From positions 248,001 through 312,000 of the IMG/VR virus record IMGVR_UViG_3300021057_000274: DNA of 64,000 nt; one strand, given 5' to 3'. This document shows, piece after piece, positions 34,105 to 62,923 of this stretch. The notes below the pieces were generated by a model. The model had not been told where the DNA came from, did not search any database, and saw only the letters and a program-made list of their open reading frames with translations. The translations under genes were made by a program, and so were the position numbers. How positions within the stretch are numbered: position 1 is the stretch's first letter; each line of letters starts with the position of its first letter.

Positions 34105-34503
34105 ATGAGCGCTCGGCTCTACAAGTCGCACACCTACGTCGATGACTACACGGTCGTCGTACATGCCACCGGGTTTGACTTGAACGACCACCCGGACCTG
34201 CAAAATGATCTCCACATCAAGTGCGAAGCTATCTTCACTAAGTCGTTTGCGATATTTGACGGCATCGGGATGCTTGAGAACCTTCACACCGCGGAGACCG
34301 CGAGGGCTCTCCTCGATCGGCTCTCTAGCATCTTGACGGAGCAGATGGGGATTGAGGTTAAGATCATTGACTTTCAAGCCTCTTTAGACTTGCTGCACAT
34401 GAGGAATCTCGCTTACTTCAAGGTCAGCATCGATCCAGAGGTCTATAAGAACGCCGGAGCTAAGAGGTTGCTTGAGCTCCTCTGTCAACCAGCTCAAGAA
34501 TAA
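34105..34503 (+). CDS. Hypothetical protein
   Basis: ORF in operon. Confidence 0.5.
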   Translation: MSARLYKSHTYVDDYTVVVHATGFDLNDHPDLQNDLHIKCEAIFTKSFAIFDGIGMLENLHTAETARALLDRLSSILTEQMGIEVKIIDFQASLDLLHMRNLAYFKVSIDPEVYKNAGAKRLLELLCQPAQE

Positions 34504-34533
34504 ATACCCTCACGATGCGTTGCTTGTTAGAAT
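34501..34533 (+). promoter_or_regulatory. TAAAT-N20-GTTAGAAT promoter before ino1
   Basis: Same motif and spacing at 46459 and 62891. Confidence 0.6.
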
Positions 34534-34716
34534 AGCATCGTCGACCTACTCTCTGCTGAGCACAGTCTCGGACGAGCCAAAAGCCGGCAACACCAGGTGG
34601 TGTTGATCGTCGTAAAACTGATTCCGGTTCATAGCGGTCATCTAGGTTCATCCTCCTTGATCGTCGACGCAACGGCCGTGTAGCCGTTTTGAGCAACAGA
34701 CGTACAGGAAGCCAAA

Positions 34717-35859
34717 ATGTCTAAGAAAATTCGTGTCGCCGTAGCAGGCATCGGAAATTGCTTTTCCTCTCTCTATCAGGGTCTCGAGTTCTACAAGGAC
34801 ACCGACCCGGACAGCGGGATCATTCCGGGCGTGATGCACATGCGCATCGGTGGCTATCATCCGGCCGATATCCAGATCGTTGCGGCATTCGACGTCGATC
34901 GACGCAAGGTCGGTCGCCCCGTCGGCGAGGCGATCTTCGCTGCACCGAACTGCGCTCGCGTGTTCTGTCAGGATGTTCCGGACGGACCGATTGTGCAGAT
35001 GGGTCCGGTCATGGATGGGGTGTCGGATTACATGCAAGAGCAGCCAGAGAAGATCGGCTTTCGCGTCTCGAACGAGGAGCCGGTCAACATCGTTCAGGTT
35101 CTTCAAGATACGAAGGCAGACATTCTGATCAACTACCTCCCGGTCGGCTCCGAGACCGCCTCTAAGCATTACGCTCAGTGCGCGATCGCTGCTGGGGTCG
35201 CTTTCATGAATTGCATCCCGGTCTTCATCGCCTCTGATCCGGAGTGGGAGAAACGGTTCATCGAGGCTGGGCTTCCGATCATCGGCGATGACATGCGCAG
35301 CCAGTTCGGGGCGTCGATCATGTCGCAGATCCTCCAAGAGACCGCCTTCGATCGCGGCTGTGACGTGCTCTACCACCAGCAGATCAACATCGGGGGCAAC
35401 ACGGACTTCAACAACATGATGGTGCAAAGTCGGCTGAAGTCAAAGAAGATCTCGAAGGAGAACGTGATTCGCGCTCAGAACGACCTGCGCGGAATCCCGG
35501 TTGACCCCGACGCGCTCTTCGCCGGGCCCTCGACGTTCATCCCGTACCTCAAGGACAACAAGGTCGCGTACATCAATCACCGTCTGCTCGGGTTCGGCGG
35601 CGCTCCGATCGACATCGACGTCAAGCTCTCGGTGCAAGACTCCGAGAACTCGGCGGGGGTGGTGATCGACGCGGTGCGCTACCTCAAGGTCGCGAGAGAA
35701 GAGGGGATCGTCGGCGCTCTGCGCGGACCGTCGGCCTTCACCCAGAAGACCCCTCCACAGCAGATGCGCCTCAACGACGCGAAGGAGGAGTGTGACGCGT
35801 TCGCGAGGCGCGACCTGGCGGCGCTCAAGGCGGTCAACAAGTTCAAGAGCAAGATCTAA
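34717..35859 (+). CDS. ino1: myo-inositol-1-phosphate (inositol-3-phosphate) synthase, bacterial/archaeal type
   Basis: VAVAGIGNCFSSLYQG, VAAFDVD, NYLPVGSE, GDDMRSQFGA, NIGGNTDF, SKKISK, DSENSAG, KTPP. Confidence 0.93.
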   Translation: MSKKIRVAVAGIGNCFSSLYQGLEFYKDTDPDSGIIPGVMHMRIGGYHPADIQIVAAFDVDRRKVGRPVGEAIFAAPNCARVFCQDVPDGPIVQMGPVMDGVSDYMQEQPEKIGFRVSNEEPVNIVQVLQDTKADILINYLPVGSETASKHYAQCAIAAGVAFMNCIPVFIASDPEWEKRFIEAGLPIIGDDMRSQFGASIMSQILQETAFDRGCDVLYHQQINIGGNTDFNNMMVQSRLKSKKISKENVIRAQNDLRGIPVDPDALFAGPSTFIPYLKDNKVAYINHRLLGFGGAPIDIDVKLSVQDSENSAGVVIDAVRYLKVAREEGIVGALRGPSAFTQKTPPQQMRLNDAKEECDAFARRDLAALKAVNKFKSKI

Positions 35860-35870
35860 CCAAGGAATCA

Positions 35871-37097
35871 ATGAGCACCAACTCGATCTACAACTTCAAC
35901 GTCGGAGTACACAGCGCAGAGGAAGCGGCAGGCATGTCGATCCTGGCGATGCAGGAGCGCTTTCGCAAGCTCGGCGTCTCGTTCTTCAGCTGGGAGAAGG
36001 AGATGGTCGTTAACATGCCGAAGAAGCTCTTTCTCGACGAGGTGCTCAGGATCATCGAGGAGCTAGACGAGAGCATCAGCTACACCAACGTGATGGTGCT
36101 CTCGCCTGGCATCGTCGAGATAACGCTCTCGAAGCAACGGCCAGAGAGCATGCTCGAGACCCAGGACGAGCTTCGAGTCTACATCAAGCTCAACAGCTGG
36201 GAGTACTACGACGAGTACGGTGAGGAGACTCAGTTCCCCTTCGTCACCCAAAAGGACGAGATGGTCTGCGTCGCGAACATCGAGGTGATGGGACAGAGCT
36301 GGCTCGCCGAGATCTTCATCCCGAAGCTGCTCGAGTGCGTCAATCAGCACCGCCAGTCCGACAAGATCTCGCTCATCAAGTGGCTCTACTCGTCTCAGCA
36401 TGGCACCGCGAGCAAGGTCTTTCAGATTCGCAAGGACTGGGAGATCAACCCCGTCTACTACCCGTGGCTCAAGCAGCATCTCAGCGAGCTAAACATCGCT
36501 GGGGAGGAGAGCCTTCGTCCCTACTACCACGCCTTCCTCAAGAGCCAGTCACAGATCCTCGTGCTCTTCGGTGAACCTGGCACCGGCAAGACGTCGTTCA
36601 TCCGTGACATGATCTGCGAGATGGGACTCAACGCGCTCATCTCGTACGACCTCAAGGTGCTGACGTCGGATCACACGTTCATCGAGTACCTGACGAGCGA
36701 CATCTTCGACCTGATCGTGGTCGAGGACGCTGACGACCTGCTCACCTCCTCCCGGAGCGAGAACAACAAGGTCATCTCGAAGATCCTCAACGTCTCGGAC
36801 GGCATCATCAAGCTCCCCAAGAAAAAGATGATCTTCACGACGAACTTGCGCGACGTCAGCGAGATCGACAACGCGGTCTACCGTCTCGGTCGCTGCTTCG
36901 ACGTCGTTAACTTCAGAAAGCTCGACCACGTTGAGGCTCAGAGCGTCGCTGACGCGCTTGACATCAAGCTTCCAGAGAAGAAGGGCGACAGCTACGCATT
37001 GTCAGACCTCTTCTTCTTGAAGAACCTCGGGAACAGCGATGATCCGTTCGTCAAGCGCAACGAGGAGCGTCTCAAGAAGAAGCTAGGCTTCGTTTGA
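35871..37097 (+). CDS. AAA+ ATPase
   Basis: GEPGTGKTS, LIVVEDAD, ILNVSDG, IFTTN, RLGRCFD. Confidence 0.85.
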   Translation: MSTNSIYNFNVGVHSAEEAAGMSILAMQERFRKLGVSFFSWEKEMVVNMPKKLFLDEVLRIIEELDESISYTNVMVLSPGIVEITLSKQRPESMLETQDELRVYIKLNSWEYYDEYGEETQFPFVTQKDEMVCVANIEVMGQSWLAEIFIPKLLECVNQHRQSDKISLIKWLYSSQHGTASKVFQIRKDWEINPVYYPWLKQHLSELNIAGEESLRPYYHAFLKSQSQILVLFGEPGTGKTSFIRDMICEMGLNALISYDLKVLTSDHTFIEYLTSDIFDLIVVEDADDLLTSSRSENNKVISKILNVSDGIIKLPKKKMIFTTNLRDVSEIDNAVYRLGRCFDVVNFRKLDHVEAQSVADALDIKLPEKKGDSYALSDLFFLKNLGNSDDPFVKRNEERLKKKLGFV

Positions 37098-37693
37098 CGA
37101 TTCACAATCTCTTTCCGATCCCAATCGGCTCTTACAAGATCGGAAGAGAGCTGACGCTTGATGAGCTAAAGTATCTCGACGGCTTACTAAGACGACCGAA
37201 CGTCGGAAACGCTACCAGTTGCAGCTCAACGATCCTTGAGAGCCAGGAGCTGAGCGAGCTTACAAGGTTCATCCTCGGATCACTTAAGAGCTACTTCATC
37301 CAGGTCTACGACCCGCTCCACGACGTTAAGCTCAAGATCACCCAGAGCTGGTGCAACTACACGAAGCCCGGTCAGCATCACCACAAGCACAACCACGGCA
37401 ACAGCTTCATCTCAGGCGTGTTCTACGTCAAGGCCGACAAGATGATCGATAAGCTTTACTTTTATCAGGACGCGTATCAGCAACTCCAAATTCAGCCCAA
37501 AGTTTGGAATCTCTGGAACGCGCGCTCGTGGTGGCTAGAGGTAGGAGCTGGTGACTTACTCCTCTTCCCCTCTGCCTTGACCCACGAAGTAGCCGCGGTT
37601 GAGGGCACCGAAGAGCGAATCAGCATCTCCTTCAACACCTTCCCCATCGGAATCCTCGGGGACGAGAGAGATCTAACGCTGGTAAAAGTTTAG
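37094..37693 (+). CDS. 2OG-Fe(II) oxygenase (TIGR02466-like)
   Basis: SWCN...HHKHNHGNSFISGVFYV...GDLLLFPSALTHEV...RISISFN. Confidence 0.85.
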   Translation: MTIHNLFPIPIGSYKIGRELTLDELKYLDGLLRRPNVGNATSCSSTILESQELSELTRFILGSLKSYFIQVYDPLHDVKLKITQSWCNYTKPGQHHHKHNHGNSFISGVFYVKADKMIDKLYFYQDAYQQLQIQPKVWNLWNARSWWLEVGAGDLLLFPSALTHEVAAVEGTEERISISFNTFPIGILGDERDLTLVKV

Positions 37694-38470
37694 CAGAGCT
37701 TGAAAGAGCTTAGGTCTGTCGCACGCGTACATCCCAGCGCAGTTTAGGCAATTGTATTCAATCACCTTGAAGCTGCCGTCGGTCATCCGCACGAAGTCGA
37801 CAACGTAGTTTCGAGCTGGCGCGTAGTGAAGCTTGACGACGTTGAAGAACGACGTGACGTCTCGCACCTCGCTAGGCGTCAAGCGCTCGTAAGTGATCTT
37901 CGCTCCGATCTTGTAGACCGAAGAGGTGATAAGCTTGCCGTCAACGACGAAGTTGCGGTACTCCCTCTCCATCCCGTCGACGAGAGTTGCGCACAGCACT
38001 TGCTCGTCGTTCGGATGGTCGGAGAACGATGAGTCTTGGATCGACTTGCCAAAGATCGCGGCGTAGGGAGTTTGACCCTCCTCAACGATCGTGCCGGCGA
38101 ACGCTTTCAAGTCCCGCGTCGGCTTGATGAAGACGGGAGCAGTGACTGGCACGTCGCGAATCGTGCCGAAGCGCGCGAAGAAGGCGTGCGAGTTGAGGAG
38201 CAACTTTCCGAGGGCCTTGTGGTAGAAGGCCTGATCAAACGCGAGCGGGTCATAGTTCACGACGGCGCTGTGCGGAAGCACGCCGCGCTCCCGCATCTTC
38301 AGCATCTTCGTCGATCCGAGCATGATGACTCGGTCGTACTCGTAAAACTTCTCGAGCTCGACGATCTCGTCACTGAATGGGATTAACCCGAACCAGATCG
38401 GATCATGAACTCCGATCGACTGGAGCGCGAGCTGGTTCTCCATCAGCTCTTGCTCGCGCATGTGACTCAA
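37673..38470 (-). CDS. ATP-grasp protein (DUF4343/R2K-like)
   Basis: FIKPTRDLKAFAG, EYRNFVVDGKLITSSVY, YVVDF, VIEYN...AGMY. Confidence 0.8.
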   Translation of the reverse strand: MSHMREQELMENQLALQSIGVHDPIWFGLIPFSDEIVELEKFYEYDRVIMLGSTKMLKMRERGVLPHSAVVNYDPLAFDQAFYHKALGKLLLNSHAFFARFGTIRDVPVTAPVFIKPTRDLKAFAGTIVEEGQTPYAAIFGKSIQDSSFSDHPNDEQVLCATLVDGMEREYRNFVVDGKLITSSVYKIGAKITYERLTPSEVRDVTSFFNVVKLHYAPARNYVVDFVRMTDGSFKVIEYNCLNCAGMYACDRPKLFQALLNFYQR

Positions 38471-38489
38471 CTGAACTCCGAAGGTGATC

Positions 38490-38582
38490 TTAGGGATGTG
38501 ATTTTCTCCAGGGACACCAAACGGATGGCCATTGCGGATGACTAAAGATCGAGCGCTTGCAGTGCTTGCACACGGGGATCAT
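38490..38582 (-). CDS. Small Cys-rich peptide (30 aa, not in supplied ORF track)
   Basis: MIPVCKHCKRSIFSHPQWPSVWCPWRKSHP; ATG 5 nt after minus-strand TACAAT. Confidence 0.4.
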   Translation of the reverse strand: MIPVCKHCKRSIFSHPQWPSVWCPWRKSHP

Positions 38583-38587
38583 GAGAA

Positions 38588-38640
38588 ATTGTAACATCTC
38601 CGTCAACTATTGTACATCGCGTCAAGATCTATGTTAGAAT
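38588..38640. promoter_or_regulatory. Back-to-back sigma70-like promoters sharing palindromic TGTACA
   Basis: TGTACA at 38611-38616; TAGAAT at 38635-38640 (+) and TACAAT at 38588-38593 (-). Confidence 0.55.
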
Positions 38641-38646
38641 TTGACG

Positions 38647-39090
38647 ATGGTAGAGTTGAGAGATCTCGAGCTGAAAGATACAGCGGAGCTTTACGCGCTG
38701 ATCGAGATCTCGCGCAAGGATCTTCTCAATCTCTGGTGGGCGGAGTCAGCGACGTTCGAGTCGACAGCCCAGTTCATCGAGAACGCTAGACGGAGCTCGA
38801 ATCACGTCAAGGCGATCGTCGTTGACGGTCAGATCGCCGGCTGCATCTCTCTCATCGACATGCCAGACGGGAGCTTTCAGCTCGGGTACTGGTTAGGGAC
38901 TCCGCATCGCGGAAAGAGACACATTCAGCACGCGGTCGAGAAGATCAAGACCTTAGCAGAAGCGTACAGGCGTCAGATCATCGTGCGCATCAAGTCCAAG
39001 AACGTGAAGAGCCTGAGCGTCGTCAAGGGCGCAGGCTTCACGCATGTTGGCAACGACGGAGAGTGGACCTGGCACGTTTGGCGGCCGTAA
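38647..39090 (+). CDS. GNAT acetyltransferase (RimJ/RimL type)
   Basis: IAGCISL...LGYWLGTPHRGK...NVKSLSVVKGAGF. Confidence 0.85.
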   Translation: MVELRDLELKDTAELYALIEISRKDLLNLWWAESATFESTAQFIENARRSSNHVKAIVVDGQIAGCISLIDMPDGSFQLGYWLGTPHRGKRHIQHAVEKIKTLAEAYRRQIIVRIKSKNVKSLSVVKGAGFTHVGNDGEWTWHVWRP

Positions 39091-40232
39091 ACATTCTTCC
39101 CGACTTCAAGCAAGATCTGGATCGTAGCCTCATCCCGCAGATCCAGCGCTTCTGGACCAAGATCAACGAGCGTCAGCTCCACTTCATGGGAGTGCCAGGC
39201 TTTGAGACCTACGACACCGACGGAGATGAAGCTCTCGGGCGAGACGTCGAGTTCTTCCACTTCAGCATCTGCGCTGATGCCCGCATGCGCTACCTCGGAG
39301 AGAACTTCGTTCTCAACGATGATCAGCTCCTTGACCCCGTCAACAAGCTCTCTAACGCGGTCGTCGCGCACCTGTACGGCGGCCGTCGGATTTACTCGCT
39401 CTTCACGGGCGTCACTGACCCTCGCAAGGCGTACCTGGACTTTTCGCGAGTGGGAAGTGACCCTGACTACGTCAGGATGGTGCGTAGCAACGCTGAATAC
39501 GCGAAGCTACACGGTTTCAAGTTCTACGGCACAACGGAGCTACACACGTCTCTCCAGACTGCTGCGCGAAATTTCTGCCGAGACAAGTATGGTGATCCTG
39601 GCCGACCCGCAAGCAATGTCGACATTATCGAGTGGATCGCCTCCTGGCGCGACAAGGGGTTATTTGAAGCGCTTCTCGGGGCGACATCACTGGGAGAGAC
39701 CTTTGAGCACATCAAGTCCCTACCAGGAGTTGGCGCATACTACGGATACCACCTCGCCGTAGATTGCTCGCTCTTCCCGTTCACGAGATACCACCATGAC
39801 GAGCCGTTTTGCGTGCCCGGCGGCGGTTGCCAAACGACGTTGAAGATGCTCTTCCCGAGGCTCACCGCGTCGAAGAAGTTTCCCTTCGGCGAGGCGGTGG
39901 TCTGGATCGAGCAGAACCAGAAGGACCTGTTTCCGACGCTCCAGTTCCATCCGGCCCTTTGGAACATCGAGCGAGACGGGAAGAAGGTCTTTCCCTTCGA
40001 GCAGAACAAGCTGATGGTCTACGGTCTCGAGGTCGGGCTTTGCCAATTCGGAGTTTATTGCCACCTCAAGAAGAATCCTCACCTGATCGAGCGCCGCAAG
40101 GTCGGCGTCGATCCTGACCTGACGCCCCTCATCCTGCGAGAGCAGGGCGCGCCAGTTACCCCCGAGGAGCTGCGTGAGCTTCAGAGCGAAGCCGCGGCCC
40201 CGACGGCCACGAAGGGTCTCCTGGAGTTCTGA
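39063..40232 (+). CDS. aGPT-Pplase / amino-acid:DNA-transferase-like base hypermodification enzyme (HhH helical fold)
   Basis: IKSLPGVGAYYGYHLAVD HhH, VPGGGC loop, LEVGLCQFGVY; ends KGLLEF. Confidence 0.7.
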   Translation: MDLARLAAVNILPDFKQDLDRSLIPQIQRFWTKINERQLHFMGVPGFETYDTDGDEALGRDVEFFHFSICADARMRYLGENFVLNDDQLLDPVNKLSNAVVAHLYGGRRIYSLFTGVTDPRKAYLDFSRVGSDPDYVRMVRSNAEYAKLHGFKFYGTTELHTSLQTAARNFCRDKYGDPGRPASNVDIIEWIASWRDKGLFEALLGATSLGETFEHIKSLPGVGAYYGYHLAVDCSLFPFTRYHHDEPFCVPGGGCQTTLKMLFPRLTASKKFPFGEAVVWIEQNQKDLFPTLQFHPALWNIERDGKKVFPFEQNKLMVYGLEVGLCQFGVYCHLKKNPHLIERRKVGVDPDLTPLILREQGAPVTPEELRELQSEAAAPTATKGLLEF

Positions 40233-40432
40233 TGGGTCACTACTCTGAGCAGTACGAAGCTTCCGCTCGCGAGGAAGCGAAGCGCGAGAAGAAGCGTGCT
40301 CGACAGCAGCTGACGGCGATGGCGGAATTTCGCGACCAGCTGATCGGCAACATCGGTGCCGACGGCATCTCGCCGCGGCACCTGGACGCTTTTCAAGACA
40401 TGATGAACGAGACGAAGCTGCGCGCGAGATGA
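40232..40432 (+). CDS. Hypothetical protein
   Basis: TGATG coupled ORF. Confidence 0.5.
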   Translation: MGHYSEQYEASAREEAKREKKRARQQLTAMAEFRDQLIGNIGADGISPRHLDAFQDMMNETKLRAR

Positions 40433-40665
40433 AGCACAGCGAGCTTTTTTTAGACGTGTACATCAAGCCCGTCCAACCAGTCGAGTACTTTACCGTCTCG
40501 GTAGATGTCGGTGACGGCGAGGTGATCGTGCGAGATCTCACGATCTTGAAGAGCCGTAACGCAGATCTAACGCCAGAGCAGGAGAAGCTCTGGGAGATCT
40601 TCGCCTCCGCTGGATTCGTAGCCAGTCGCAAATTTTCAATTAACAAAGACCTCAAGATAGGATAA
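40429..40665 (+). CDS. Hypothetical protein
   Basis: Coupled ORF. Confidence 0.45.
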   Translation: MKHSELFLDVYIKPVQPVEYFTVSVDVGDGEVIVRDLTILKSRNADLTPEQEKLWEIFASAGFVASRKFSINKDLKIG

Positions 40666-40677
40666 AATCTAACAAAT

Positions 40678-41400
40678 ATGCTCACTGGCTCTTACTATAA
40701 GAAGGGCGAGGGGTTCGTGGATGTACCCCTTAAGCAACACAAGACCGGGCTCTACTTCCGTCCTGGCTCCCACGATCGCGCGGCGATCGTCGACTGTACC
40801 GGCGGGCGCGACTACGTCACCGTCAACTGCGCTGGGCACCGCGTCCTCGACCTGGGCGGCAACATCGGCGCGTTCATCTTCAAGGCCGCTAGGGAGGGAG
40901 CAGAGCGAGTACTCTCGTTCGAGCCCGAGCCCAGCAACTTCAAGGTGCTCCAGGCCAACCTCGAGCACGCGATCAAGCCGCTCAACAGCTCGACGATCGT
41001 CGAGGCTCGCCAGCAGGCGGTCGCCGACAAGCATGACAAGCTCGAGCTGATCGTCGGCGGCAGCTACAGCACGGGCACCCCGTCGCTGACCGCCAAGAAG
41101 GGCAAGGACAAGGTCGGCATCCTCGTTGACGTCGTGCCGTTCAAGGAGGTCTGCGAGGAGTTCAAGCCGACGCTCCTCAAGATGGACATTGAGGGCGCCG
41201 AGTACTCGTTCATCTTCGACGGCCTTCCGGAGTCGATCCGCGAGTTCGTCTTCGAGATCCACGGTCAGAACGCTCGCGAGAACGAGCTGATGCACAAGTG
41301 CTGGGAGATGTACACGAGGGACTGGGACGTCGTCTCACGCTTCGATCGCAAGTTCTTCGGTAAGACCCACCTGATCATCGCTCACCTCAAGCGGAAGTGA
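40678..41400 (+). CDS. FkbM-family SAM-dependent methyltransferase
   Basis: VLDLGGNIGAF, VLSFEPEPSNF, LLKMDIEGAEY. Confidence 0.88.
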   Translation: MLTGSYYKKGEGFVDVPLKQHKTGLYFRPGSHDRAAIVDCTGGRDYVTVNCAGHRVLDLGGNIGAFIFKAAREGAERVLSFEPEPSNFKVLQANLEHAIKPLNSSTIVEARQQAVADKHDKLELIVGGSYSTGTPSLTAKKGKDKVGILVDVVPFKEVCEEFKPTLLKMDIEGAEYSFIFDGLPESIREFVFEIHGQNARENELMHKCWEMYTRDWDVVSRFDRKFFGKTHLIIAHLKRK

Positions 41401-41633
41401 CCACGACGCCGATCCTCCCGACCGCGGGGGAGGAGATGACTGGGAATGAGCTGATCGCTCAGCTGCGTGAGCATCAGCTCACGCACAAGATCTGGGCAGA
41501 GTGGTTCGAAGCGCATCCGGAAGATCCTCGACAACACACCGAGGGAATCGGCGACGCGGTCTTCCATCGGCAGATCGAGGCGAAGTACTCAGAGATGATC
41601 CGCTGTGTGCAACGATTGATGAGTGAAGCCTGA
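41397..41633 (+). CDS. Hypothetical protein
   Basis: Coupled ORF. Confidence 0.5.
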   Translation: MTTTPILPTAGEEMTGNELIAQLREHQLTHKIWAEWFEAHPEDPRQHTEGIGDAVFHRQIEAKYSEMIRCVQRLMSEA

Positions 41634-42925: not shown

Positions 42926-43095
42926 TGACTTTTGATTACGGCCTCATGGCGCAAACGGTGAAAGCTTTCTCAGACGTGATGGAGCAGATCCAGAAATCTG
43001 AGCAGTGTTCTACCGCGATTCGGGTCGGTGCGCTCCAAGCTCAAGCTGGTCTTACTCCGCTGATGAGGGCGATCCTGGAAGAGTATAAGAAGTGA
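42925..43095 (+). CDS. Small hypothetical protein (56 aa, not in supplied track)
   Basis: MTFDYGLMAQ...ILEEYKK fills the gap with coupled start and stop. Confidence 0.5.
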   Translation: MTFDYGLMAQTVKAFSDVMEQIQKSEQCSTAIRVGALQAQAGLTPLMRAILEEYKK

Positions 43096-43475: not shown

Positions 43476-43489
43476 CATTTTCTGGGGAA

Positions 43490-43495
43490 TAAATA
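43490..43495 (+). promoter_or_regulatory. Late promoter
   Basis: TAAATA then RBS AGGAG. Confidence 0.65.
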
Positions 43496-43513
43496 AGCTC
43501 ATAGGAGACTTAT

Positions 43514-46458: not shown

Positions 46459-46491
46459 TAAATATCCTAGGATCGCAACCAAGGTTAGAAT
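46459..46491 (+). promoter_or_regulatory. TAAAT-N20-GTTAGAAT promoter before nrdA leader
   Basis: Same motif and spacing as 34501 and 62891. Confidence 0.6.
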
Positions 46492-46498
46492 AACTCAA

Positions 46499-46721
46499 GC
46501 TGTAACGTTTGACCGCTTAGCGGCTCAGAACAAGTACAGGTCAAGTAAGAATAATTGCCTTGCCGGCGATCCTAACAATAAAAAGACTGCGGTCGAGCAT
46601 GTGACCAGCGGACCGGCGCAAGCGGCGATTGCCCTTCACAGCGAGAGCTGATTTAGGAGCTGCCGTGTTCATGAAAAGTGATCACGGAGCTCCTTTTCTT
46701 TTTCGCTGTGCGACATAGCGA
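46499..46721 (+). ncRNA. Putative structured leader or small RNA upstream of nrdA
   Basis: ORF-free about 240 nt with several stems (46509-46544; 46553-46630; 46656-46693; 46703-46721). Confidence 0.4.
46656..46703 (+). terminator. Intrinsic-terminator-like hairpin 31 nt before nrdA start
   Basis: GGAGCT-G-CCGTG...CACGG-AGCTCC followed by TTTTCTTTTT. Confidence 0.55.
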
Positions 46722-46734
46722 CAGAGAATGAGAG

Positions 46735-49092
46735 ATGTCGATCCAAGTTACGAAGCGCAACGGAGAGCGCGAACCGCTCGACGTTGAGAAGATGCACCGG
46801 GTGTTGGAGTGGGCCTGCGAGGAGCTAGCAGGTGTTTCGGTCTCCGACATCGAGATGAAGTCCCACATTCAATTTTACGACGGAATCGCTACCTCAGAGA
46901 TTCACGACATCACCACCTCGGCGGCCGAGGACCTGATCTCGGAGGAGCGCCCCAACTACCAGTACGTCGCCGCGCGAATGATGATCTTCGACCTGCGGAA
47001 GAAGGTCTTCGGCTCGTACGAGCCCATCCGCCTTCTCGACATCGTCAAGCGCAACGCTGAGAGGGGCATCTACGACAAGAACATCCTGTCATGGTATACC
47101 GAGGAGGAGTGGCTCAAGCTAGGCTCCTATCTCAAGCATGAGCGTGACTTCAAGCTGACGGCGGCGGCGGTCAAGCAGATCAAGGATAAGTACCTCATCC
47201 AGGACCGGTCGACACGTACCTACTACGAGACCCCGCAGATCGCGTTCATGTTGATCGCGGCGACTGGCTTTCACAAGTACCCGAAGGCGACCAGGCTCCA
47301 GTACGTGCGCGACATGTACGACGCCATCTCGAAGTTTCAGGTCTCCCTCCCCACTCCGATCCTCGGTGGCCTTCGCTCGAGCATCAAGCAGTTCAGCTCG
47401 TGCGTCTTGATCGATGTCGGTGACAGCCTTGAGTCGCTGACCGACGCGACCAAGATGATGACCAAGTACGTCTCGAAGCGAGCCGGACTTGGCATCAACG
47501 GCGGGAGGATTCGTGCGCTCGGGTCGAAGGTCGGCAAGGGTGAGATCGTCCACACCGGCGTCACCCCGTACTATCGGATGTTCGAGTCGGCGATCAAGAG
47601 CTGTTCAGCTGGCGGCATCCGTGACGCCGCGGCGACGCTCTACGCTCCCGTTTGGCATCGCGAGATCGAGGACATCATGGTCCTCAAGAACAACAAGGGC
47701 ACTCACGAGACCCGAGTGCGTCGCCTTGATTACGCGATCCAGTGGGACACCTATCTGCTTCGCCGGGCGGCCAAGAAGCAACCGATCACCCTGTTCTCTC
47801 CCCATGAGGTTCCTGATCTCTATGAGGCGTACTTTGGCAAGGATCGCAAGAAGTTCGAGGAGCTCTACGAGAGCTACGAGAGAGATCCAGCGATCAAGTA
47901 CAAGAAGGTGGTTGACGGGCGTGAGCTACTGACGACGTTTCTCAAGGAGTCACAAGAGACCGGTCGTCTCTATGGGTTCCTCGCGGACAACGTCAACCTC
48001 CACACCCCGTTCAAGGACCCGATCTTCATGTCGAACCTGTGCGTCGAGATCTGTCTCCCGACGACTCCAGTTCTCAACAAGTACTCGAACTTTGAGGAGC
48101 GTGACGACTTCGCCAAGGACGCGACGGTAGACTTCGAGGGACTCATCCAGCTCTGCACGCTCGCGGCGGTTAACCTCGGGAGCCTCAACCTCGACGAGAC
48201 GCACGACATGGAGAAGCGGATGGATCTCCTCGTGCGCTTCCTCAACGAGCTGATCGACTATCAGGACTACCCGGTGCCTCAAGCCTACCGAGCGACGATG
48301 AAGTACCGTCCGCTCGGCATCGGCGCGATCAACTACGCGTACCTCCTGGCGAAGAACGGACTCAAGTACTCCGACCCGGAGAGCCACAACCTGACTCACC
48401 GTGTCGCCGAGCAGATGTACTACTTCGCGCTCAAGGCGTCAAACAACTTGGCCAAGGAGCGAGGCGCTTGCAACGGCTTCGTTGACACGATCTACGCGGA
48501 CGGCAAGCTCTTGATCGACACCTACGCCAGGACGGTCGACGAGGTGCACACCGAAAAGCTCCATCTCGCGTGGGACGAGCTTCGCCGAGAGGTCAAGGAG
48601 CACGGCGTGCGCAACGCGACGCTCCTCGCTTTCATGCCGTCAGAGTCATCTAGCTCTGTTTCAAACGCGACGAGCGGGGTCGATCCGATCCGCTCCGTCG
48701 TCACCCGAAAGGCGAACAAGAAGACGTCGTTCGTTCAGGTCGCGCCCGAGGCGATGCGATTGAAGAACCAATATCACCTGCTCTGGGACATGACCGCGAG
48801 GGACATGGACGGCGTCATCAAGAACATGGCCGTGCTTCAAAAGTTTACGTGCCAGTCGATCTCGACCAACTTCTCCTACAACCCAGAGCACTACCCCGAG
48901 AAGAAGATCCCTCTCGAGGTGCTGATCAACCACTTTCTCCTGGCGACAAAGCTAGGCCTGAAGACCAGGTACTACGTCAACACCAAGGGAGAGCGTGACC
49001 ACACCGAGGAAGCTGAGAAGCAACCCGCCACCGTCGTTGAAGTCACCCCTGAGCTAGCCCCCGAGGGTGACTGCGACTCTTGCAAGATCTGA
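46735..49092 (+). CDS. nrdA: Ribonucleotide reductase class Ia alpha subunit
   Basis: ATP cone VTKRNGERE, QFSSCVLI, SNLCVEICLP, CTLAAVNLG, MPSESSS, C-terminal CDSCKI. Confidence 0.97.
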   Translation: MSIQVTKRNGEREPLDVEKMHRVLEWACEELAGVSVSDIEMKSHIQFYDGIATSEIHDITTSAAEDLISEERPNYQYVAARMMIFDLRKKVFGSYEPIRLLDIVKRNAERGIYDKNILSWYTEEEWLKLGSYLKHERDFKLTAAAVKQIKDKYLIQDRSTRTYYETPQIAFMLIAATGFHKYPKATRLQYVRDMYDAISKFQVSLPTPILGGLRSSIKQFSSCVLIDVGDSLESLTDATKMMTKYVSKRAGLGINGGRIRALGSKVGKGEIVHTGVTPYYRMFESAIKSCSAGGIRDAAATLYAPVWHREIEDIMVLKNNKGTHETRVRRLDYAIQWDTYLLRRAAKKQPITLFSPHEVPDLYEAYFGKDRKKFEELYESYERDPAIKYKKVVDGRELLTTFLKESQETGRLYGFLADNVNLHTPFKDPIFMSNLCVEICLPTTPVLNKYSNFEERDDFAKDATVDFEGLIQLCTLAAVNLGSLNLDETHDMEKRMDLLVRFLNELIDYQDYPVPQAYRATMKYRPLGIGAINYAYLLAKNGLKYSDPESHNLTHRVAEQMYYFALKASNNLAKERGACNGFVDTIYADGKLLIDTYARTVDEVHTEKLHLAWDELRREVKEHGVRNATLLAFMPSESSSSVSNATSGVDPIRSVVTRKANKKTSFVQVAPEAMRLKNQYHLLWDMTARDMDGVIKNMAVLQKFTCQSISTNFSYNPEHYPEKKIPLEVLINHFLLATKLGLKTRYYVNTKGERDHTEEAEKQPATVVEVTPELAPEGDCDSCKI

Positions 49093-49093
49093 G

Positions 49094-50251
49094 ATGACCA
49101 ACACCGTCTTCAACCTCAACAAGGTTGACCTCAACGAGCAACCGATGTTTTTCGGCAAGAAGGCGAACATCGCTCGCTACGACCAGGAGAAGTATCCCGC
49201 CTTTTCAAAGGCTACCAAGACCATGAAGAGCTTCTTCTGGAACCCCGAGGAGATCAACCTCCAGAAGGACGCATCGGACTTCAAGGCGTTATCAGACCAC
49301 GAGAAGCACATCTTCACGAAAAACATCGCGTACCAGGTGCTGCTTGACAGCGTTCAGGAGCGCGGCCCGCTCTATGCCTTTTTGCCGTGGTGCACTCTCC
49401 CGGAGCTCGAAGCCTCACTGATCTGGTGGGCGGCGTTCGAGCAGATCCACAGCCAGTCCTACCAATGGATCTTGCAAAACCTCTTTCCGGACCCCGCGAC
49501 GATCTTCGACACGATCATGGACGACTCGAACATCATGACCCGGGCCGGCGCGATCATCAAGTACTACGATGACTTCGTCCAGTACTCCGAGCAGTACCGT
49601 GTGCTGGGGCCGGGCACTCACCGCCTGATCACGTATCCTGAAGGGCCGCACGCGCCCCAGACCAAGGAGGACTTCGAGCTCTCGGAGTACGAGCTGAAGC
49701 GCAAGCTCTACCTCGCGCTCGTCTCGGTCTACGCTCTCGAGTCGATCCGCTTCTACGTCTCGTTCGCGTGCAGCTTCGCGTTCGGGCAGCAAGGCAAGAT
49801 GAAGGGGAACGCAGACATCATCAAGCTGATCGCGAAGGATGAGGCGCAGCACGTCGGGATCACAGTAAACATCCTCCGCAACTTGATGCGCAAGGAGGGC
49901 GACAAGGACTTCGTCAAGATCGCCAAGGACGAGGAGGAAACGGTCTACCAGATCTTCGACGAGGTGGTCAGCCAAGAGAAGGAGTGGGCGGCATACCTGT
50001 TCAAGGATGGCTCGATCGTCGGCTTGAACGAGACGCTCCTCTGTCAGTATCTCGAGTATCTGGCGAATAAGCGCCTTCGCGGTCTCGGCTTGAAGTCGCG
50101 CTATGACGCGAACGTCAATCCGTTCGGCTGGATCACGACCTGGCTCTCCTCCGAGGACGAGCAGGTGGCCCCGCAGGAGAAGGAGGTTACCTCCTACCTG
50201 GTGAACGTGCTCGACACGAACGTCAACGAAGAAAACCTGATCGAAATTTGA
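49094..50251 (+). CDS. nrdB: Ribonucleotide reductase class Ia beta subunit
   Basis: FFWNPEEI, LLDSVQ, EQIHSQSY, ALESIRFYVSFACSFAF, DEAQH, VAPQE. Confidence 0.96.
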   Translation: MTNTVFNLNKVDLNEQPMFFGKKANIARYDQEKYPAFSKATKTMKSFFWNPEEINLQKDASDFKALSDHEKHIFTKNIAYQVLLDSVQERGPLYAFLPWCTLPELEASLIWWAAFEQIHSQSYQWILQNLFPDPATIFDTIMDDSNIMTRAGAIIKYYDDFVQYSEQYRVLGPGTHRLITYPEGPHAPQTKEDFELSEYELKRKLYLALVSVYALESIRFYVSFACSFAFGQQGKMKGNADIIKLIAKDEAQHVGITVNILRNLMRKEGDKDFVKIAKDEEETVYQIFDEVVSQEKEWAAYLFKDGSIVGLNETLLCQYLEYLANKRLRGLGLKSRYDANVNPFGWITTWLSSEDEQVAPQEKEVTSYLVNVLDTNVNEENLIEI

Positions 50252-54712: not shown

Positions 54713-56055
54713 TCAAGCCTGTCCCCGAGAAGGAGCTCCTCAAGATCGCGGCGGCTCTAGAGGACTACCACAAGATCTTCTACACCTTCTGGGAGATGTC
54801 GGACGTCTTGTATGACGACTCTCTCCCGACCGCGGCCGTCGAGTTCTTGAAGGGGGAGCGAAAGCCTCGGCTGTTGATCAACGAGGAGTTCTGGAAGAAG
54901 CTCAACCACCGGGAGCGGCTGTTCGTCGCTTGCCACGAGTGCCTCCACGTCATCCTCGATCACGGACAACGCAACGGGAGGGAGGTCAAGGGATCGACCC
55001 CGCACCTGGTCAACGTCGCCCAGGACATCACGATCAACGAGATGATCGTCGACGTCTTCGGTTACGAGCGCAAGGACTTCAGGAAGTGGAAGGATCTCTG
55101 CTGGATCGACACGTGCTTCGATGACCCGACGATCGTCAAGCGAAACCAGAAGTTCACGTATTACCTCGAGATGCTGATCAAGCACGGGAAGAAAGATCTT
55201 CCGAAGGTCTTCGATCGGCACCAGCCCTCTCAGTCTGACGAGAAGAAGTCGGGATCTCAGCCCAGTGACCCGAAGCCAAGCCCCGGCGACCCGAAGTCTG
55301 CTGATCCTGCGCCGACGGGTGAAGAGGAGTCTCAAGAGCAGCGTGACGCCAGGCAATCGGCGGCTGAGAAGCTCGCGGCTGATCTCTCGCCTGAGGAGAT
55401 CCATGACATCATGGAGGCTGGCGAGCTGGGCGGTGACCTGGCCGCCGCGATAAACGCGGTCCTCGGCGACAAGAAGGAGCGAGCTCGGGTGAGGTTCGCG
55501 AAGATGGTCGCTCGGCTGAAGCGGACACGAATGAAGCTCAAGGAGAGCGAATTCGAGACGTTCTCCCGAGATGATCGGCGCTTCGACGATGTCGTGCGAT
55601 CGTACGGCGCCGTGCTTCCCGGGAAGGGTGAGGCCTTCAGGCCCGCCAAGGATCGCATCCTCGCGTACGTCTACATGGACGTCTCGATGTCGTGCGTCGC
55701 GTATCTGCCGATCTTCGAGAAGATCTGGGCCGCGTTTGACGCCGAAAAGGACATCTTCGAGTGTGAGACGTACATCTTCGACACGAAGGTGACCCCTCAC
55801 AAGCCGGGAGACGACGCGCGCGTCGGCGGAGGGACCTGGTTCAACATCATCGAGGAGAGCGTTCTCGGGCGCAAGGCCGAGACAGGCCGCTACCCCGACG
55901 CGGTCTTCGTCATCACCGACGGCGACTGCGCGCCGAGTACCGCGGTCGACCCGCTGGTGCCTGAGCGATGGGTCTGGCTGCTGATCGATCGCGCCGAGCT
56001 CAAGTACATCCCGAAAGGATCTAGGTGGTACTGGATCAAGGACGTAGTTTTCTAA
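54709..56055 (+). CDS. HExxH metallopeptidase plus VWA domain protein (DUF2201-like), MoxR partner
   Basis: ACHECLHVILDH, VNVAQDITIN, YMDVSMS, GGGTWF, VITDG. Confidence 0.85.
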   Translation: MIKPVPEKELLKIAAALEDYHKIFYTFWEMSDVLYDDSLPTAAVEFLKGERKPRLLINEEFWKKLNHRERLFVACHECLHVILDHGQRNGREVKGSTPHLVNVAQDITINEMIVDVFGYERKDFRKWKDLCWIDTCFDDPTIVKRNQKFTYYLEMLIKHGKKDLPKVFDRHQPSQSDEKKSGSQPSDPKPSPGDPKSADPAPTGEEESQEQRDARQSAAEKLAADLSPEEIHDIMEAGELGGDLAAAINAVLGDKKERARVRFAKMVARLKRTRMKLKESEFETFSRDDRRFDDVVRSYGAVLPGKGEAFRPAKDRILAYVYMDVSMSCVAYLPIFEKIWAAFDAEKDIFECETYIFDTKVTPHKPGDDARVGGGTWFNIIEESVLGRKAETGRYPDAVFVITDGDCAPSTAVDPLVPERWVWLLIDRAELKYIPKGSRWYWIKDVVF

Positions 56056-56083
56056 ATCACCGCCTGATGTTACAATCTATCCG

Positions 56084-59728: not shown

Positions 59729-59743
59729 GATGTAAATAGGCTC

Positions 59744-61757: not shown

Positions 61758-61758
61758 C

Positions 61759-62106
61759 ATGAAGGCGACGATGGAGCAGTACTTGGTATGGTGGGTCAAT
61801 CAGGTGGATTGCGAGGCGATCGGTGAGAAGCTCAACCAGGCTCTCCCGACGGCGCCGGTCTACTTGCAGACCCAGTACATCTCCAGATATGGCCGCGGCG
61901 GCAGAGGGAGACTCTGGATCTCTCCGCTGTTGAACTTGCCCAGCGACGTCGCGATCGACCCGTGGCCATCCACTCCGCTCGGAGAGGTTCTCGCCGGCGA
62001 TTACGGCGGCATCGTCATCAAGGCCGAGGACGCGCCGTGGGCGCTGCCAGGCGTCATCACCGATCTCAAGCTGCGCCGAGTCTACCCGATTACCGTGGAG
62101 CGCTAA
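61759..62106 (+). CDS. Hypothetical protein
   Basis: ORF in operon. Confidence 0.5.
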   Translation: MKATMEQYLVWWVNQVDCEAIGEKLNQALPTAPVYLQTQYISRYGRGGRGRLWISPLLNLPSDVAIDPWPSTPLGEVLAGDYGGIVIKAEDAPWALPGVITDLKLRRVYPITVER

Positions 62107-62109
62107 ATC

Positions 62110-62673
62110 ATGTCCTCTCTCCGTGAGCAACTCCTCCAGCTTCTGGCCAACAAGGGGCACTCGCCCGTCGTCGAGGTCATCGGCATCATCTTCGATGACC
62201 AGTATCTCGAGAAGGGCATGCAAGCTCGCGTAGTCGAGATTCATGAGGGGGTCGAGGGCGATCCCCAGATGGACGAGATCATCCTCGACTTCAGCGACTT
62301 TGTCAGATCGAACCGGGCTCTCGAGCGACCCTCCTACTACGATCGAGCTGGCGTGCCGCGCTTGACCGCGACGGAGTCAGGGCACGTCCCGAAGAACAAT
62401 CGGGAAGAGATCTACATCATGCACGACCAGTACGACAAGTGCTTGAAGCTCAACGACCGCCCGCTCTTCTTCGAATATCTTCGTCTGGTCGAGAGCGGAG
62501 ACATCGGTAGATCGACTCCGATGGTCACCTACGTTGAGTGGCTTGAGCGCGGCGACGCGGCGTTTCGCAAGGCGGCCGAGATCGTGCGCGAGCAGGGTAA
62601 GCTCCACAGGTGCAGCGCGCTCTCGATCGAGAGCACTTGCGCGGCGCTCTACGCGGCGAAGCTCGATGGCTAA
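62110..62673 (+). CDS. Hypothetical protein
   Basis: ORF in operon. Confidence 0.5.
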   Translation: MSSLREQLLQLLANKGHSPVVEVIGIIFDDQYLEKGMQARVVEIHEGVEGDPQMDEIILDFSDFVRSNRALERPSYYDRAGVPRLTATESGHVPKNNREEIYIMHDQYDKCLKLNDRPLFFEYLRLVESGDIGRSTPMVTYVEWLERGDAAFRKAAEIVREQGKLHRCSALSIESTCAALYAAKLDG

Positions 62674-62893
62674 GGAGCACTTGAAGCTTCCCGAGTTCGA
62701 CAGGGTCGAGAAAGAGCTCGAGCTCATCTCGAGCGACTCCAACGTTCGCCTCGTGGTTGACTTCGACGACGTTAACCATGACGTCGTGGAGGAGCTGACG
62801 AAGCTGATCGTCAAGGCGGTCAATAACATTCCCGTCGAGGAGTGGAGAGGGGCTGTCAAGGCGGGTAGAGATCGTCATCGGGAAGATCACTAA
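62666..62893 (+). CDS. Hypothetical protein
   Basis: Overlapping start; ORF in operon. Confidence 0.45.
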   Translation: MAKEHLKLPEFDRVEKELELISSDSNVRLVVDFDDVNHDVVEELTKLIVKAVNNIPVEEWRGAVKAGRDRHREDH

Positions 62894-62923
62894 ATTCCTA
62901 GCTCTTCCAGAGTGTGTTAGAAT
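62891..62923 (+). promoter_or_regulatory. TAAAT-N20-GTTAGAAT promoter before dCMP deaminase
   Basis: Same spacing as 34501 and 46459. Confidence 0.6.

What the first reader, a model, noticed from the sequence alone, without database searches (positions are those of the whole stretch)
34501..62923. A promoter motif TAAAT-N20-GTTAGAAT precedes ino1, nrdA and dCMP deaminase
Seen: TAAATACCCT (34501), TAAATATCCT (46459) and TAAATTCCTA (62891) each begin exactly 25 nt before GTTAGAAT (34526, 46484, 62916). Two of the three targets make dNTPs. Inference: a middle-mode promoter class analogous to the T4 MotA box plus -10, placing ino1 in the DNA-precursor regulon and supporting a DNA-modification role.
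Basis: partly seen in the sequence, partly recalled or inferred. Interest (0 to 1): 0.6.

Follow-up and report, generated by a model that had tools for sequence, protein, structure and literature searches.

The report
DNA-metabolism promoter class in jumbo phage
A two-box promoter (an A-rich box plus a host-type -10) recurs at exact spacing, and is conserved in related phages, in front of the nucleotide-synthesis, replication and ino1-like genes of a 389-kb T4-related phage; it marks a third, probably "middle", transcription class in a phage that lacks T4's MotA and AsiA proteins.

Summary
Genome-wide (389 kb, T4-superfamily jumbo phage), 5 of 10 plus-strand STTAGAAT have WAAAT exactly 25 nt upstream (P~1e-10). 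Relaxing the -10 to TAnAAT gives 8 such promoters, and every one precedes nucleotide-metabolism or replication genes: two ThyA-like operons, a DsbA-like gene leading to the DNA polymerase, a FEN/RNase H cluster, ino1-like, nrdAB, dCMP deaminase and the clamp loader. Orthologous nrdA and ino1 promoters in diverged relatives (72-78% protein identity, 43-44% GC against 58%) keep only the two boxes and the exact spacing.

GTTAGAAT is a sigma70-type -10 with G at -14, as in the phage's ~46 T4-early-like promoters (gTTTACT-17-TGnTAnAAT). The box sits where the -35 should be but does not match it.

Two caveats apply. First, TAAATA is also this phage's general late motif: 99 copies, a gp55 homolog is encoded, and it precedes structural genes. 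At nrdA and ino1 the box reads ATAAATA, so those two may carry overlapping late and sigma70 promoters. Second, there are no MotA or AsiA homologs, the geometry differs from T4 (17 bp against 12), and no transcript data could be obtained.

Verdict: a real promoter class and a real DNA-metabolism regulon. The "middle mode with an activator" reading is plausible but untested.

The parts
34501..34510 (+). Upstream box TAAATACCCT of the ino1 promoter. It contains the late-type heptamer ATAAATA (34500-34506).
   Evidence: The box is conserved as TAAATACTCT at the same 25-nt offset in relative L016.
34526..34533 (+). GTTAGAAT: sigma70-type -10 (TAGAAT 34528-34533) with G at -14. Predicted start is near 34540.
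   Evidence: In L016 the element lies 31 nt before the conserved CCTAC of the leader, where AT-rich relatives have TATAAT (31-32 nt).
34512..34541 (+). Inverted repeat ACGATGC / GCATCGT enclosing the -10.
   Evidence: fold, z = -1.4. L016 has a different but complementary pair of arms around its -10.
34540..34716 (+). ino1 leader: conserved structured RNA motif (stem, CCTACTCTCT, AACTGA at 34616) and a terminator-like hairpin with a T run (34672-34691).
34717..35859 (+). ino1-like gene (myo-inositol-1-phosphate synthase family). An AAA ATPase (35871-37097) and a 2OG-Fe(II) oxygenase (37094-37693) follow.
38611..38640 (+). Fourth GTTAGAAT promoter: TGTACA-18-TAGAAT with TG, and no WAAAT box. 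The ATG of the GNAT gene (38647) is the 7th nt after TAGAAT, so the transcript is predicted to be leaderless. The 5-hmdU DNA kinase gene is at 39078.
46459..46468 (+). Upstream box TAAATATCCT of the nrdAB promoter (ATAAATAT at 46458-46465).
   Evidence: ATAAATAT is invariant in the two orthologous nrdA promoters L080 and L081.
46484..46491 (+). GTTAGAAT -10 of the nrdAB promoter. Predicted start is near 46498.
   Evidence: It reads GTTAGAAT in L080 and GTTACAAT in L081, at the same offset.
46498..46734 (+). nrdA leader. It is strongly structured and carries a terminator-like hairpin with TTTTCTTTTT (46656-46703) about 30 nt before the ATG.
   Evidence: (z = -3.86).
46735..50251 (+). nrdA (46735-49092) and nrdB (49094-50251).
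62891..62900 (+). Upstream box TAAATTCCTA of the dCMP deaminase promoter. It does not contain the late hexamer.
62916..62923 (+). GTTAGAAT -10, flanked by the inverted repeat CAGAGTG (62908) / CACTCTG (62926). Predicted start is near 62930.
62971..63486 (+). dCMP deaminase. An alternative ATG lies at 62954.

Best explanation
These are genuine promoters of a third class in a T4-superfamily jumbo phage that transcribes with the host RNA polymerase. The downstream box (G/C)TTA(G/C)AAT is a sigma70-type -10 hexamer with G at -14, read by sigma70 regions 2 and 3, with a start about 7 nt after the hexamer. The upstream box WAAAT(A/T)(T/C)CCT spans about -39 to -30. It occupies the -35 position but does not match the phage's own early -35 (T[T/G]TACT). 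Most likely it is contacted by something other than a normal sigma region 4 to -35 interaction, namely an unidentified phage-encoded early factor. That would make the class functionally analogous to T4 middle promoters but not homologous to them. The class drives the pre-replicative DNA-metabolism set: nrdAB, dCMP deaminase, two ThyA-like operons, a MazG-like gene, a DsbA-like gene with DNA polymerase, a FEN/RNase H cluster, the clamp loader and ino1-like. At nrdA and ino1 the box reads ATAAATA, the gp55-type late motif. Those two genes are therefore probably also transcribed late, from a start about 28 nt further upstream. Both then pass through long leaders with terminator-like hairpins that add a second layer of control. 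Shown: the motif, its statistics, its conservation, gene content, and the absence of MotA and AsiA. Inferred: start sites, timing, and which protein reads the box.
For: Exact 25-nt offset: 5 of 10 STTAGAAT sites, P~1e-10, and 0 of 100 shuffles.

The -10 assignment:
- GTTAnAAT or TGnTAnAAT is the -10 of ~46 promoters with T[T/G]TACT 17 bp upstream.
- At 38633 the ATG is the 7th nt after TAGAAT, as at ~18 other promoters.
- In L016, GTTAGAAT lies where AT-rich relatives have TATAAT relative to the conserved leader.

A distinct class:
- The WAAAT box associates with TAGAAT (6/15 against 2/81, Fisher p=1.3e-4).
- The early -35 avoids TAGAAT (1/15 against 41/81, p=1.4e-3).
- The generic sigma70 scan does not call the three sites.

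Regulon: all 8 WAAAT-box promoters precede nucleotide or replication genes.

Phylogenetic footprint: nrdA promoters of L080 and L081 (72-74% NrdA identity, GC 43-44%) keep ATAAATAT and GTTA(G/C)AAT at the same offset while the spacer, flanks and leader diverge. The ino1 promoter of L016 does the same.

Late motif: TAAATA has 99 copies, of which 70 are intergenic and 3 antisense, and no flanking conservation. It precedes portal, sheath, baseplate and adaptor genes. A gp55 homolog is present.
Against:
- No MotA, AsiA or region-4-containing sigma is encoded, so the proposed factor has no candidate beyond a DsbA-like protein and an 86-aa HTH protein.
- The box shares T1, C5 and T6 with the early -35 at the same 17-bp spacing. 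Intermediates exist, such as AAAATTTACG and AAAGTTTTCT, so it could be a weak -35 plus an A-tract read by sigma70 and alpha alone.
- In all five nrdA and ino1 orthologs the conserved part is ATAAATA, the late motif. This suggests the late promoter, not an activator site, is what is selected there.
- The class is small (5 strict, 8 relaxed members).
- Gene calls are my own crude ones.
- Other replication genes (gp32, the gp41-like helicase) use TAAATA only.
Confidence: 0.55

Rival explanations
1. The sites are ordinary host-sigma70 promoters of the extended -10 type. A degenerate -35 (TwyCCT) and an adjacent A-tract act as a UP-like element. No phage factor is involved. The class is just the weak or moderate end of the early promoter family, tuned for enzymes needed in modest amounts.
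For: The spacing is the same 17 bp as in the early class, and G at -14 is shared. Intermediates exist: AAAATTTACG..GGTAGAAT at genome 8580, AAAGTTTTCT and ACAATTTTCT with GTTACAAT. No activator gene was found.
Against: The same deviations from the early consensus recur together: C instead of A at -35 position 4, AAA upstream, and G in the -10. They covary significantly and are held in orthologs across strong divergence. A merely degenerate -35 would be expected to drift. Functional coherence is 8 of 8.
Confidence: 0.2
2. The box is simply a gp55-type late promoter (TAAATA, start 11 nt after its T) lying upstream of an independent sigma70 promoter. The two promoters are tandem and give expression both before and after replication. 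There is no bipartite element.
For: ATAAATA is perfectly conserved in the nrdA (3 phages) and ino1 (2 phages) promoters. TAAATA is the stand-alone late motif and a gp55 homolog is present.
Against: It does not explain the invariant 25-nt offset in 8 of 8 paralogs and orthologs. It does not explain the six class members whose box is not TAAATA: TAAATT at 62891, AAAATA at genome 140032, and AAAATT at four sites. None of the other ~90 TAAATA sites has a -10-like element downstream.
Confidence: 0.15
3. GUUAGAAU acts at the RNA level. Transcripts starting at TAAATA+11 would begin with a hairpin that displays GUUAGAAU in its loop, as a site for a phage RNA-binding protein or nuclease or as a 5' stabiliser. 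Alternatively, the downstream -10-like element acts as a sigma-dependent promoter-proximal pause site, as at lambda PR'.
For: Inverted repeats enclose GTTAGAAT at 34512-34541, 62908-62932 and 38620-38646, and in L016 with different arm sequences. The hairpins would begin at about +1 of a TAAATA-initiated RNA.
Against: There is no such hairpin at nrdA, at genome 140056 or 48838, or in L080 and L081. At 38633 there is no TAAATA, and the 3' arm lies between the -10 and a leaderless ATG, so the repeat cannot be in the RNA. Individual folds are not significant (z about -1.2 to -1.5). Repeats flanking the -10 also occur at 20% of early-type promoters.
Confidence: 0.04
4. The motif arises by chance co-occurrence or as a recently duplicated cassette with no function.
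For: The number of sites is small.
Against: P~1e-10 and 0 of 100 shuffles. Spacers are unrelated while the boxes are conserved. Orthologs are conserved. All sites are intergenic and point at genes.
Confidence: 0.01

Closest known systems
Bacteriophage T4 middle promoters (MotA box plus sigma70 -10; sigma appropriation by MotA and AsiA)
   Same: A host-type -10 is kept while the -35 is replaced by a phage-specific box. The promoters precede nucleotide-metabolism and replication genes. The phage also has T4-like early promoters (GTTTAC-type -35, TGn, -10) and late promoters (TATAAATA-like, gp55). The -10 often carries an extension.
   Different: The box sequence (WAAATwyCCT) is unrelated to (a/t)(a/t)(a/t)TGCTTtA. 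It lies 17 bp from the -10 hexamer rather than 12+/-1 bp, so it is centred near -35 rather than -30 (PMC2988021). No MotA or AsiA homolog is encoded. Timing is unknown.
T4-type late promoters (TATAAATA, gp55/gp33/sliding clamp)
   Same: At ino1 and nrdA the box contains ATAAATA, the phage encodes a gp55 homolog, and TAAATA alone marks the structural genes.
   Different: Late promoters have no second element. Here a -10-like box is fixed 27 nt downstream. Six of the eight class members lack the exact hexamer. The genes served are enzymes, not virion parts.
T4 early / sigma70 extended -10 promoters (class A here: gTTTACTtt-N-TGnTAnAAT)
   Same: Same -10 family, G at -14, 17-bp geometry and + orientation. 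Some have a leaderless ATG 7 nt after the -10.
   Different: The -35 consensus is not met. An extra AAA lies upstream. There is a preference for G as the third base of the -10. The gene class differs: enzymes rather than small early ORFs.
preQ1-II riboswitch (RF01054), for the ino1 leader only
   Same: The order of elements is the same: a 5-bp hairpin, then a 5-6-bp stem enclosing a pyrimidine-rich loop, an A-rich linker, and AAAGGAG before the ATG. In phage Moby the gene sits in a 7-deazaguanine cluster.
   Different: The score is 17.5 bits against a gathering score of 47 (E 0.8). The invariant CCUAC and AACUGA are not preQ1-II features. This phage has no TGT, QueC or FolE. The window version is twice as long and ends in a terminator-like hairpin.

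Membership tests
T4 middle (MotA-dependent) promoter | Good sigma70 -10 (TAnnnT), often with TGn | tested here: met
   TAGAAT or TACAAT with G at -14 in most members; TG in 2 of the 3 window sites.
T4 middle (MotA-dependent) promoter | MotA box (a/t)(a/t)(a/t)TGCTTtA 12+/-1 bp upstream of the -10 | tested here: not met
   The box is WAAATwyCCT and ends 17 bp before TAGAAT. The definition is from PMC2988021.
T4 middle (MotA-dependent) promoter | Phage encodes MotA and AsiA | tested here: not met
   phmmer with T4 MotA and AsiA found nothing at E<=1. Pfam MotCF, MotA_activ and AsiA found nothing at E<=1.
T4 middle (MotA-dependent) promoter | Serves pre-replicative genes (nucleotide metabolism, replication) | tested here: met
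   8 of 8 WAAAT-box promoters.
T4 middle (MotA-dependent) promoter | Activated a few minutes after infection, dependent on early phage proteins | not testable with these tools
T4-type late promoter (gp55) | TATAAATA-like -10 motif as the sole element | tested here: inconclusive
   ATAAATA is present at 34500 and 46458 and in their orthologs. It is absent at 62891 (TAAATT). A second fixed element is present, unlike the other TAAATA sites.
T4-type late promoter (gp55) | gp55-like sigma encoded | tested here: met
   Genome 218517-219182: phmmer against T4 gp55 gives 3.9e-7, phrog_234 'late sigma transcription factor' gives 4.8e-27, and there is a weak Sigma70_r2 hit. The gene is next to gp47 and gp46 homologs.
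Sigma70 -35/-10 promoter (this phage's early class) | T[T/G]TAC[T/A] 16-18 bp upstream of the -10 | tested here: not met
   The hexamers are TACCCT, TATCCT and TTCCTA. The sites were not called by the sigma70 scan. The early -35 is depleted among TAGAAT promoters.
preQ1-II riboswitch (ino1 leader) | Reaches the Rfam gathering score | tested here: not met
   17.5 bits against 47 in L014. There was no hit in the window or in 7 relatives at gathering threshold.

The most novel reading that the evidence does not exclude
The upstream box is read by the phage's own TAAATA-recognising machinery. That would be the gp55-like sigma or the T4-DsbA-like double-stranded-DNA-binding protein, acting from the -35 position on sigma70 polymerase. 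This would be a MotA/AsiA-independent middle mode that evolved out of late-promoter recognition in T4-superfamily jumbo phages. It would tie expression of DNA-precursor genes to the approach of the late switch.
Probability: 0.12. Interest if true: 0.75.

Novelty: new variant of a known kind. Interest (0 to 1): 0.5.

Why it matters
T4's three-stage programme (early, middle, late) is the textbook example of a phage re-aiming host RNA polymerase. MotA and AsiA, however, are confined to a subset of T4 relatives, and how the others time their DNA-metabolism genes is largely unknown. This uncultivated 389-kb relative keeps T4-like early and late signals. It also shows a third, well-defined and conserved two-box signal in front of its nucleotide-synthesis, replication and DNA-modification-associated genes.

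That gives a concrete sequence to test with purified polymerase and candidate phage proteins. It also gives an annotation tool: the box flags genes of unknown function, such as the 225-aa ORF at genome 140150 and ino1-like, as part of the DNA-metabolism programme.

Tried and rejected
- Rfam: nothing at gathering threshold in the window, in the ino1 leader or in 7 relatives.
- Close relatives for other promoters: NrdA in IMG/VR reached at most 48% identity and nothing was found in GTDB genomes. The clamp loader and dCMP deaminase found nothing in IMG/VR. megablast against phage GenBank found nothing. Only the metagenome scan gave useful orthologs.
- FliA/sigma28 (TAAA-N15-GCCGATAA, recalled from memory): the spacing (19 against 25) and the -10 do not fit; rejected.
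- Mini-ORF starting at the ATG at 34515: present only at site 1; treated as coincidence.
- Hairpin with GTTAGAAT in the loop as the functional unit: present at only 3 of 6 sites. Inverted repeats around the -10 are modestly enriched at early-type promoters (20% with at least 5 bp, against 6% in shuffles). Recorded but not adopted.
- preQ ligand for the ino1 leader: the phage lacks TGT, QueC and FolE.
- Covariance model built from AT-rich leaders (R1): it did not recover the GC-rich versions, so stem covariation was counted by script instead.
- Pfam and PHROGs gave nothing for several neighbouring ORFs.

Full report
**Setting**

The window is bases 248,001-312,000 of a single 389,331-bp contig. 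IMG/VR lists the contig as a virus record, 98% complete. The same sequence is a 395,730-bp metagenome contig. GC content is 57.8% and genes lie mostly on the + strand.

The phage belongs to the T4 superfamily. phmmer with T4 proteins finds homologs of gp43, gp44, gp46, gp47, gp32, RNase H, DsbA and the late sigma gp55. PHROGs confirm the late sigma (phrog_234, 4.8e-27), the DsbA-like regulator, the clamp loader, portal, sheath and baseplate. No polymerase of its own was looked for beyond sigma families. The only sigma-like gene found is the gp55 homolog.

- GTTAGAAT occurs 4 times in the window, all on the + strand, against 0.77 expected. Genome-wide it occurs 6 times on + and never on -.
- WAAAT-N20-STTAGAAT gives 3 window matches and none in 100 shuffles.
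- Genome-wide, 5 of 10 +-strand STTAGAAT have WAAAT at -25, and no other offset from 15 to 40 is populated. Binomial P is about 1e-10.
- The two extra strict members are at genome 48814/48838 (AAAATTTCCT...CTTAGAAT) and 140032/140056 (AAAATATCCT...GTTAGAAT).

**The phage's three signal types**

De novo k-mer analysis of intergenic DNA shows three signals.

- *Early-like class.* About 46 sites match gTTTACTtt, a 17-bp spacer (40 of 46) and TGnTAnAAT or GTTAnAAT. From my knowledge of T4, this resembles the T4 early consensus.
- *TAAATA class.* There are 99 copies, of which 70 are intergenic, 26 are sense within gene ends, and only 3 are antisense. One-mismatch variants do not behave this way.
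  - There is no flanking conservation.
  - The motif precedes baseplate, portal, sheath, adaptor and virion genes, and also the gp41-like helicase and gp32.
  - With the gp55 homolog present, this is the T4-type late promoter.
  - The distance from its T to the start codon peaks at 11 nt (28 genes at 10-14 nt). This predicts leaderless late mRNAs.

**GTTAGAAT is a -10**

- It belongs to the GTTAnAAT/TGnTAnAAT family used by the early-like class.
- The fourth window copy (38633) has TGTACA 18 bp upstream. The sigma70 scan calls it a promoter. The GNAT gene's ATG (38647) is the 7th nt after TAGAAT, an arrangement seen at about 18 early-like promoters.
- Upstream of ino1-like genes in many phages there is a conserved leader. 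In AT-rich relatives, TATAAT or GTTATAAT lies 28-32 nt before the leader's invariant CCTAC. In L016, GTTAGAAT lies 31 nt before it.

**The upstream box defines a separate class**

- The six bases 17 bp upstream of TAGAAT (TACCCT, TATCCT, TTCCTA) share only T1, C5 and T6 with T[T/G]TACT. The generic scan does not call these sites.
- Among 96 oriented TAnAAT sites, WAAAT at -27 goes with TAGAAT (6/15 against 2/81, p=1.3e-4). The early -35 avoids TAGAAT (1/15 against 41/81, p=1.4e-3).

The eight WAAAT-box promoters and the genes they precede:

| Genome position | Window position | Genes downstream |
|---|---|---|
| 8580 | – | second ThyA-like gene, thymidylate-kinase-like gene |
| 48840 | – | MazG-like pyrophosphohydrolase, unknown ORF, ThyA |
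| 134588 | – | DsbA-like gene, 86-aa HTH, gp43 polymerase |
| 140058 | – | unknown 225-aa ORF … FEN/RNase H |
| 282528 | 34528 | ino1-like, AAA ATPase, 2OG oxygenase |
| 294486 | 46486 | nrdA, nrdB |
| 310918 | 62918 | dCMP deaminase |
| 315136 | – | gp44/gp62 clamp loader |

**Conservation in relatives**

A metagenome scan with NrdA found two relatives, L080 and L081, with 72% and 74% identity and GC of 44% and 43%.

- Upstream of nrdA, L080 has TAAATATCTT-N15-GTTAGAAT and L081 has TAAATATTTC-N15-GTTACAAT.
- In the three-way alignment only ATAAATAT, GTTA.AAT and a few scattered bases are invariant. The spacer, flanks and leader have diverged.
- For ino1, L016 (78% identity, GC 43%) has TAAATACTCT-N15-GTTAGAAT.

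The offset is 25 nt in all 8 paralogs and orthologs examined.

**What this means mechanistically**

Two conserved boxes at an invariant distance, with free sequence between them, are the signature of one complex touching both. The arrangement keeps a host -10 and replaces the -35 with a phage-specific box in front of pre-replicative enzymes. That is what T4 middle promoters do (PMC2988021). Membership in the T4 middle class fails, however:

- The box sequence differs.
- It sits 17 bp rather than 12+/-1 bp from the -10.
- MotA and AsiA are absent.

I therefore describe the class as working like a middle promoter, with an unknown reader of the box. Candidates worth testing are the DsbA-like protein and the small HTH protein encoded just upstream of the polymerase gene. 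Both are themselves behind a WAAAT-box promoter.

The main complication is that in all five nrdA and ino1 orthologs the conserved part of the box is ATAAATA, the late motif. The simplest reading is that the class box is A-rich (AAAAT[T/A]...). At nrdA and ino1 a T in the first position additionally creates a late promoter. That gives two starts, at about 34512 and 34540 for ino1 and about 46470 and 46498 for nrdA.

A purely tandem-promoter model does not explain the fixed offset, and it does not explain the six members that lack the exact hexamer. A purely weak sigma70 promoter model does not explain the covariation or the conservation of the deviant bases. None of these models can be settled without 5'-end data, which I could not obtain.

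**Downstream control**

Both long leaders end in terminator-like hairpins shortly before the ATG.

- The nrdA leader is 46498-46734, with fold z = -3.86. It has a 16-bp interrupted stem followed by TTTTCTTTTT at 46656-46703. L081 has an analogous hairpin plus T run.
- The ino1 leader has one at 34672-34691.

Promoter class alone therefore does not set expression of these two operons.

**ino1**

The gene is a bona fide Inos-1-P_synth family member. It has 60-81% identical homologs in many T4-like phages. Evidence for a DNA-modification role is only by neighbourhood.

- Here the gene lies beside an ATP-grasp, GNAT, 5-hmdU DNA kinase, methyltransferase and glycosyltransferase cluster.
- In Stenotrophomonas phage Moby it lies between FolE and QueC, a DpdA-like gene and QueE.
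- In L007 the gene is driven by an early-type promoter, so the promoter class is not tied to the gene across phages.

**Verdict**

The feature is real, conserved and larger than described. It is a new variant of a known kind: a phage temporal promoter class that keeps the host -10. The MotA analogy is reasonable as function, not as family. Timing and the box reader remain open.

Noticed in passing
window 34540-34691; also L007, L009-L016, L018-L021, L028-L031 and L034 just upstream of their ino1-like genes: A conserved structured leader RNA is specific to phage ino1-like genes across GC contents of 29-58%. A 4-6-bp stem abuts an invariant CCUAC. Six or more different complementary arm pairs are seen, for example CGAGAC/GUCUCG, UGGGC/GCCCA, CGCGC/GCGCG and CGUC/GACG. 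The stem is followed by a linker and an invariant AACUGA, then either AAAGGAG-ATG or, in the window, a terminator-like hairpin. Mean stem length is 5.36 bp against 3.52+/-0.30 in shuffles. No Rfam family matches; there is only a sub-threshold preQ1-II-like architecture (17.5 bits). It occurs once in this genome. It is a candidate new riboswitch or protein-binding leader.
   Followed up: partly
window 46498-46734: The nrdA leader is unusually stable (z = -3.86). It carries a strong terminator-like hairpin plus TTTTCTTTTT at 46656-46703, about 30 nt before the nrdA ATG. This suggests attenuation or antitermination control of ribonucleotide reductase. L081 has an analogous hairpin.
   Followed up: partly
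genome-wide; in the window for example TAAATA at 9111, 22338, 50615 and 59733 (ATG 10-12 nt after the T): About 28 genes have the late motif TAAATA 10-14 nt before the start codon (mode 11). About 18 early-type promoters have the ATG 5-8 nt after the -10. Many leaderless mRNAs are therefore predicted in both classes, which is unusual for a T4 relative and hints at a host that translates leaderless mRNAs well.
   Followed up: partly
window 38588-38640: Back-to-back divergent promoters share one palindromic -35, TGTACA (38611-38616). On the + strand it pairs with TAGAAT for the GNAT and 5-hmdU kinase operon. On the - strand it pairs with TACAAT for the ATP-grasp gene (37673-38461).
   Followed up: partly
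window 37673-45354, and genome 8905-9579 and 50155-51039: A thymidine-hypermodification-type cluster is present: R2K ATP-grasp, GNAT, 5-hmdU DNA kinase, methyltransferase, glycosyltransferase and DNA methyltransferase. Two ThyA-family genes lie elsewhere; one may be a dUMP hydroxymethylase. The phage probably carries hypermodified thymidine.
   Followed up: no
genome-wide class A promoters, for example genome 23159, 323136, 328522 and 369513; window 31309-31339 and 56046-56076 are weaker relatives: A subset of early-type promoters are nearly identical cassettes of about 45 nt (TGTACTttttGAGAGttttGAGTTAAAATTCTC). From memory, these are reminiscent of the promoter-early stem-loop cassettes described in T4-type phages. 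Inverted repeats enclosing the -10 are enriched (20% with at least 5 bp, against 6% in shuffles).
   Followed up: partly
L104 (Stenotrophomonas phage Moby, 28187-33601): The ino1-like gene of Moby sits inside a 7-deazaguanine DNA-modification cluster (FolE, ino1, a 123-aa hypothetical, QueC, DpdA-like, QueE), between the uvsX and gp41 homologs. The jumbo phage itself has no TGT, QueC or FolE.
   Followed up: partly
window 46386-46391 (- strand) and 46159-46368 (- strand): A minus-strand TAAATA with a Shine-Dalgarno sequence and an ATG 23 nt downstream suggests a small (69 aa) late gene diverging from the nrdA promoter region. My gene caller did not call it.
   Followed up: no
genome 219185: AAAATATCCT lies upstream of the gp47 homolog, but the -10 at the class offset is poor (GATCTAAT; TAATAT lies 3 nt further on). 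It is a possible degenerate ninth member.
   Followed up: no
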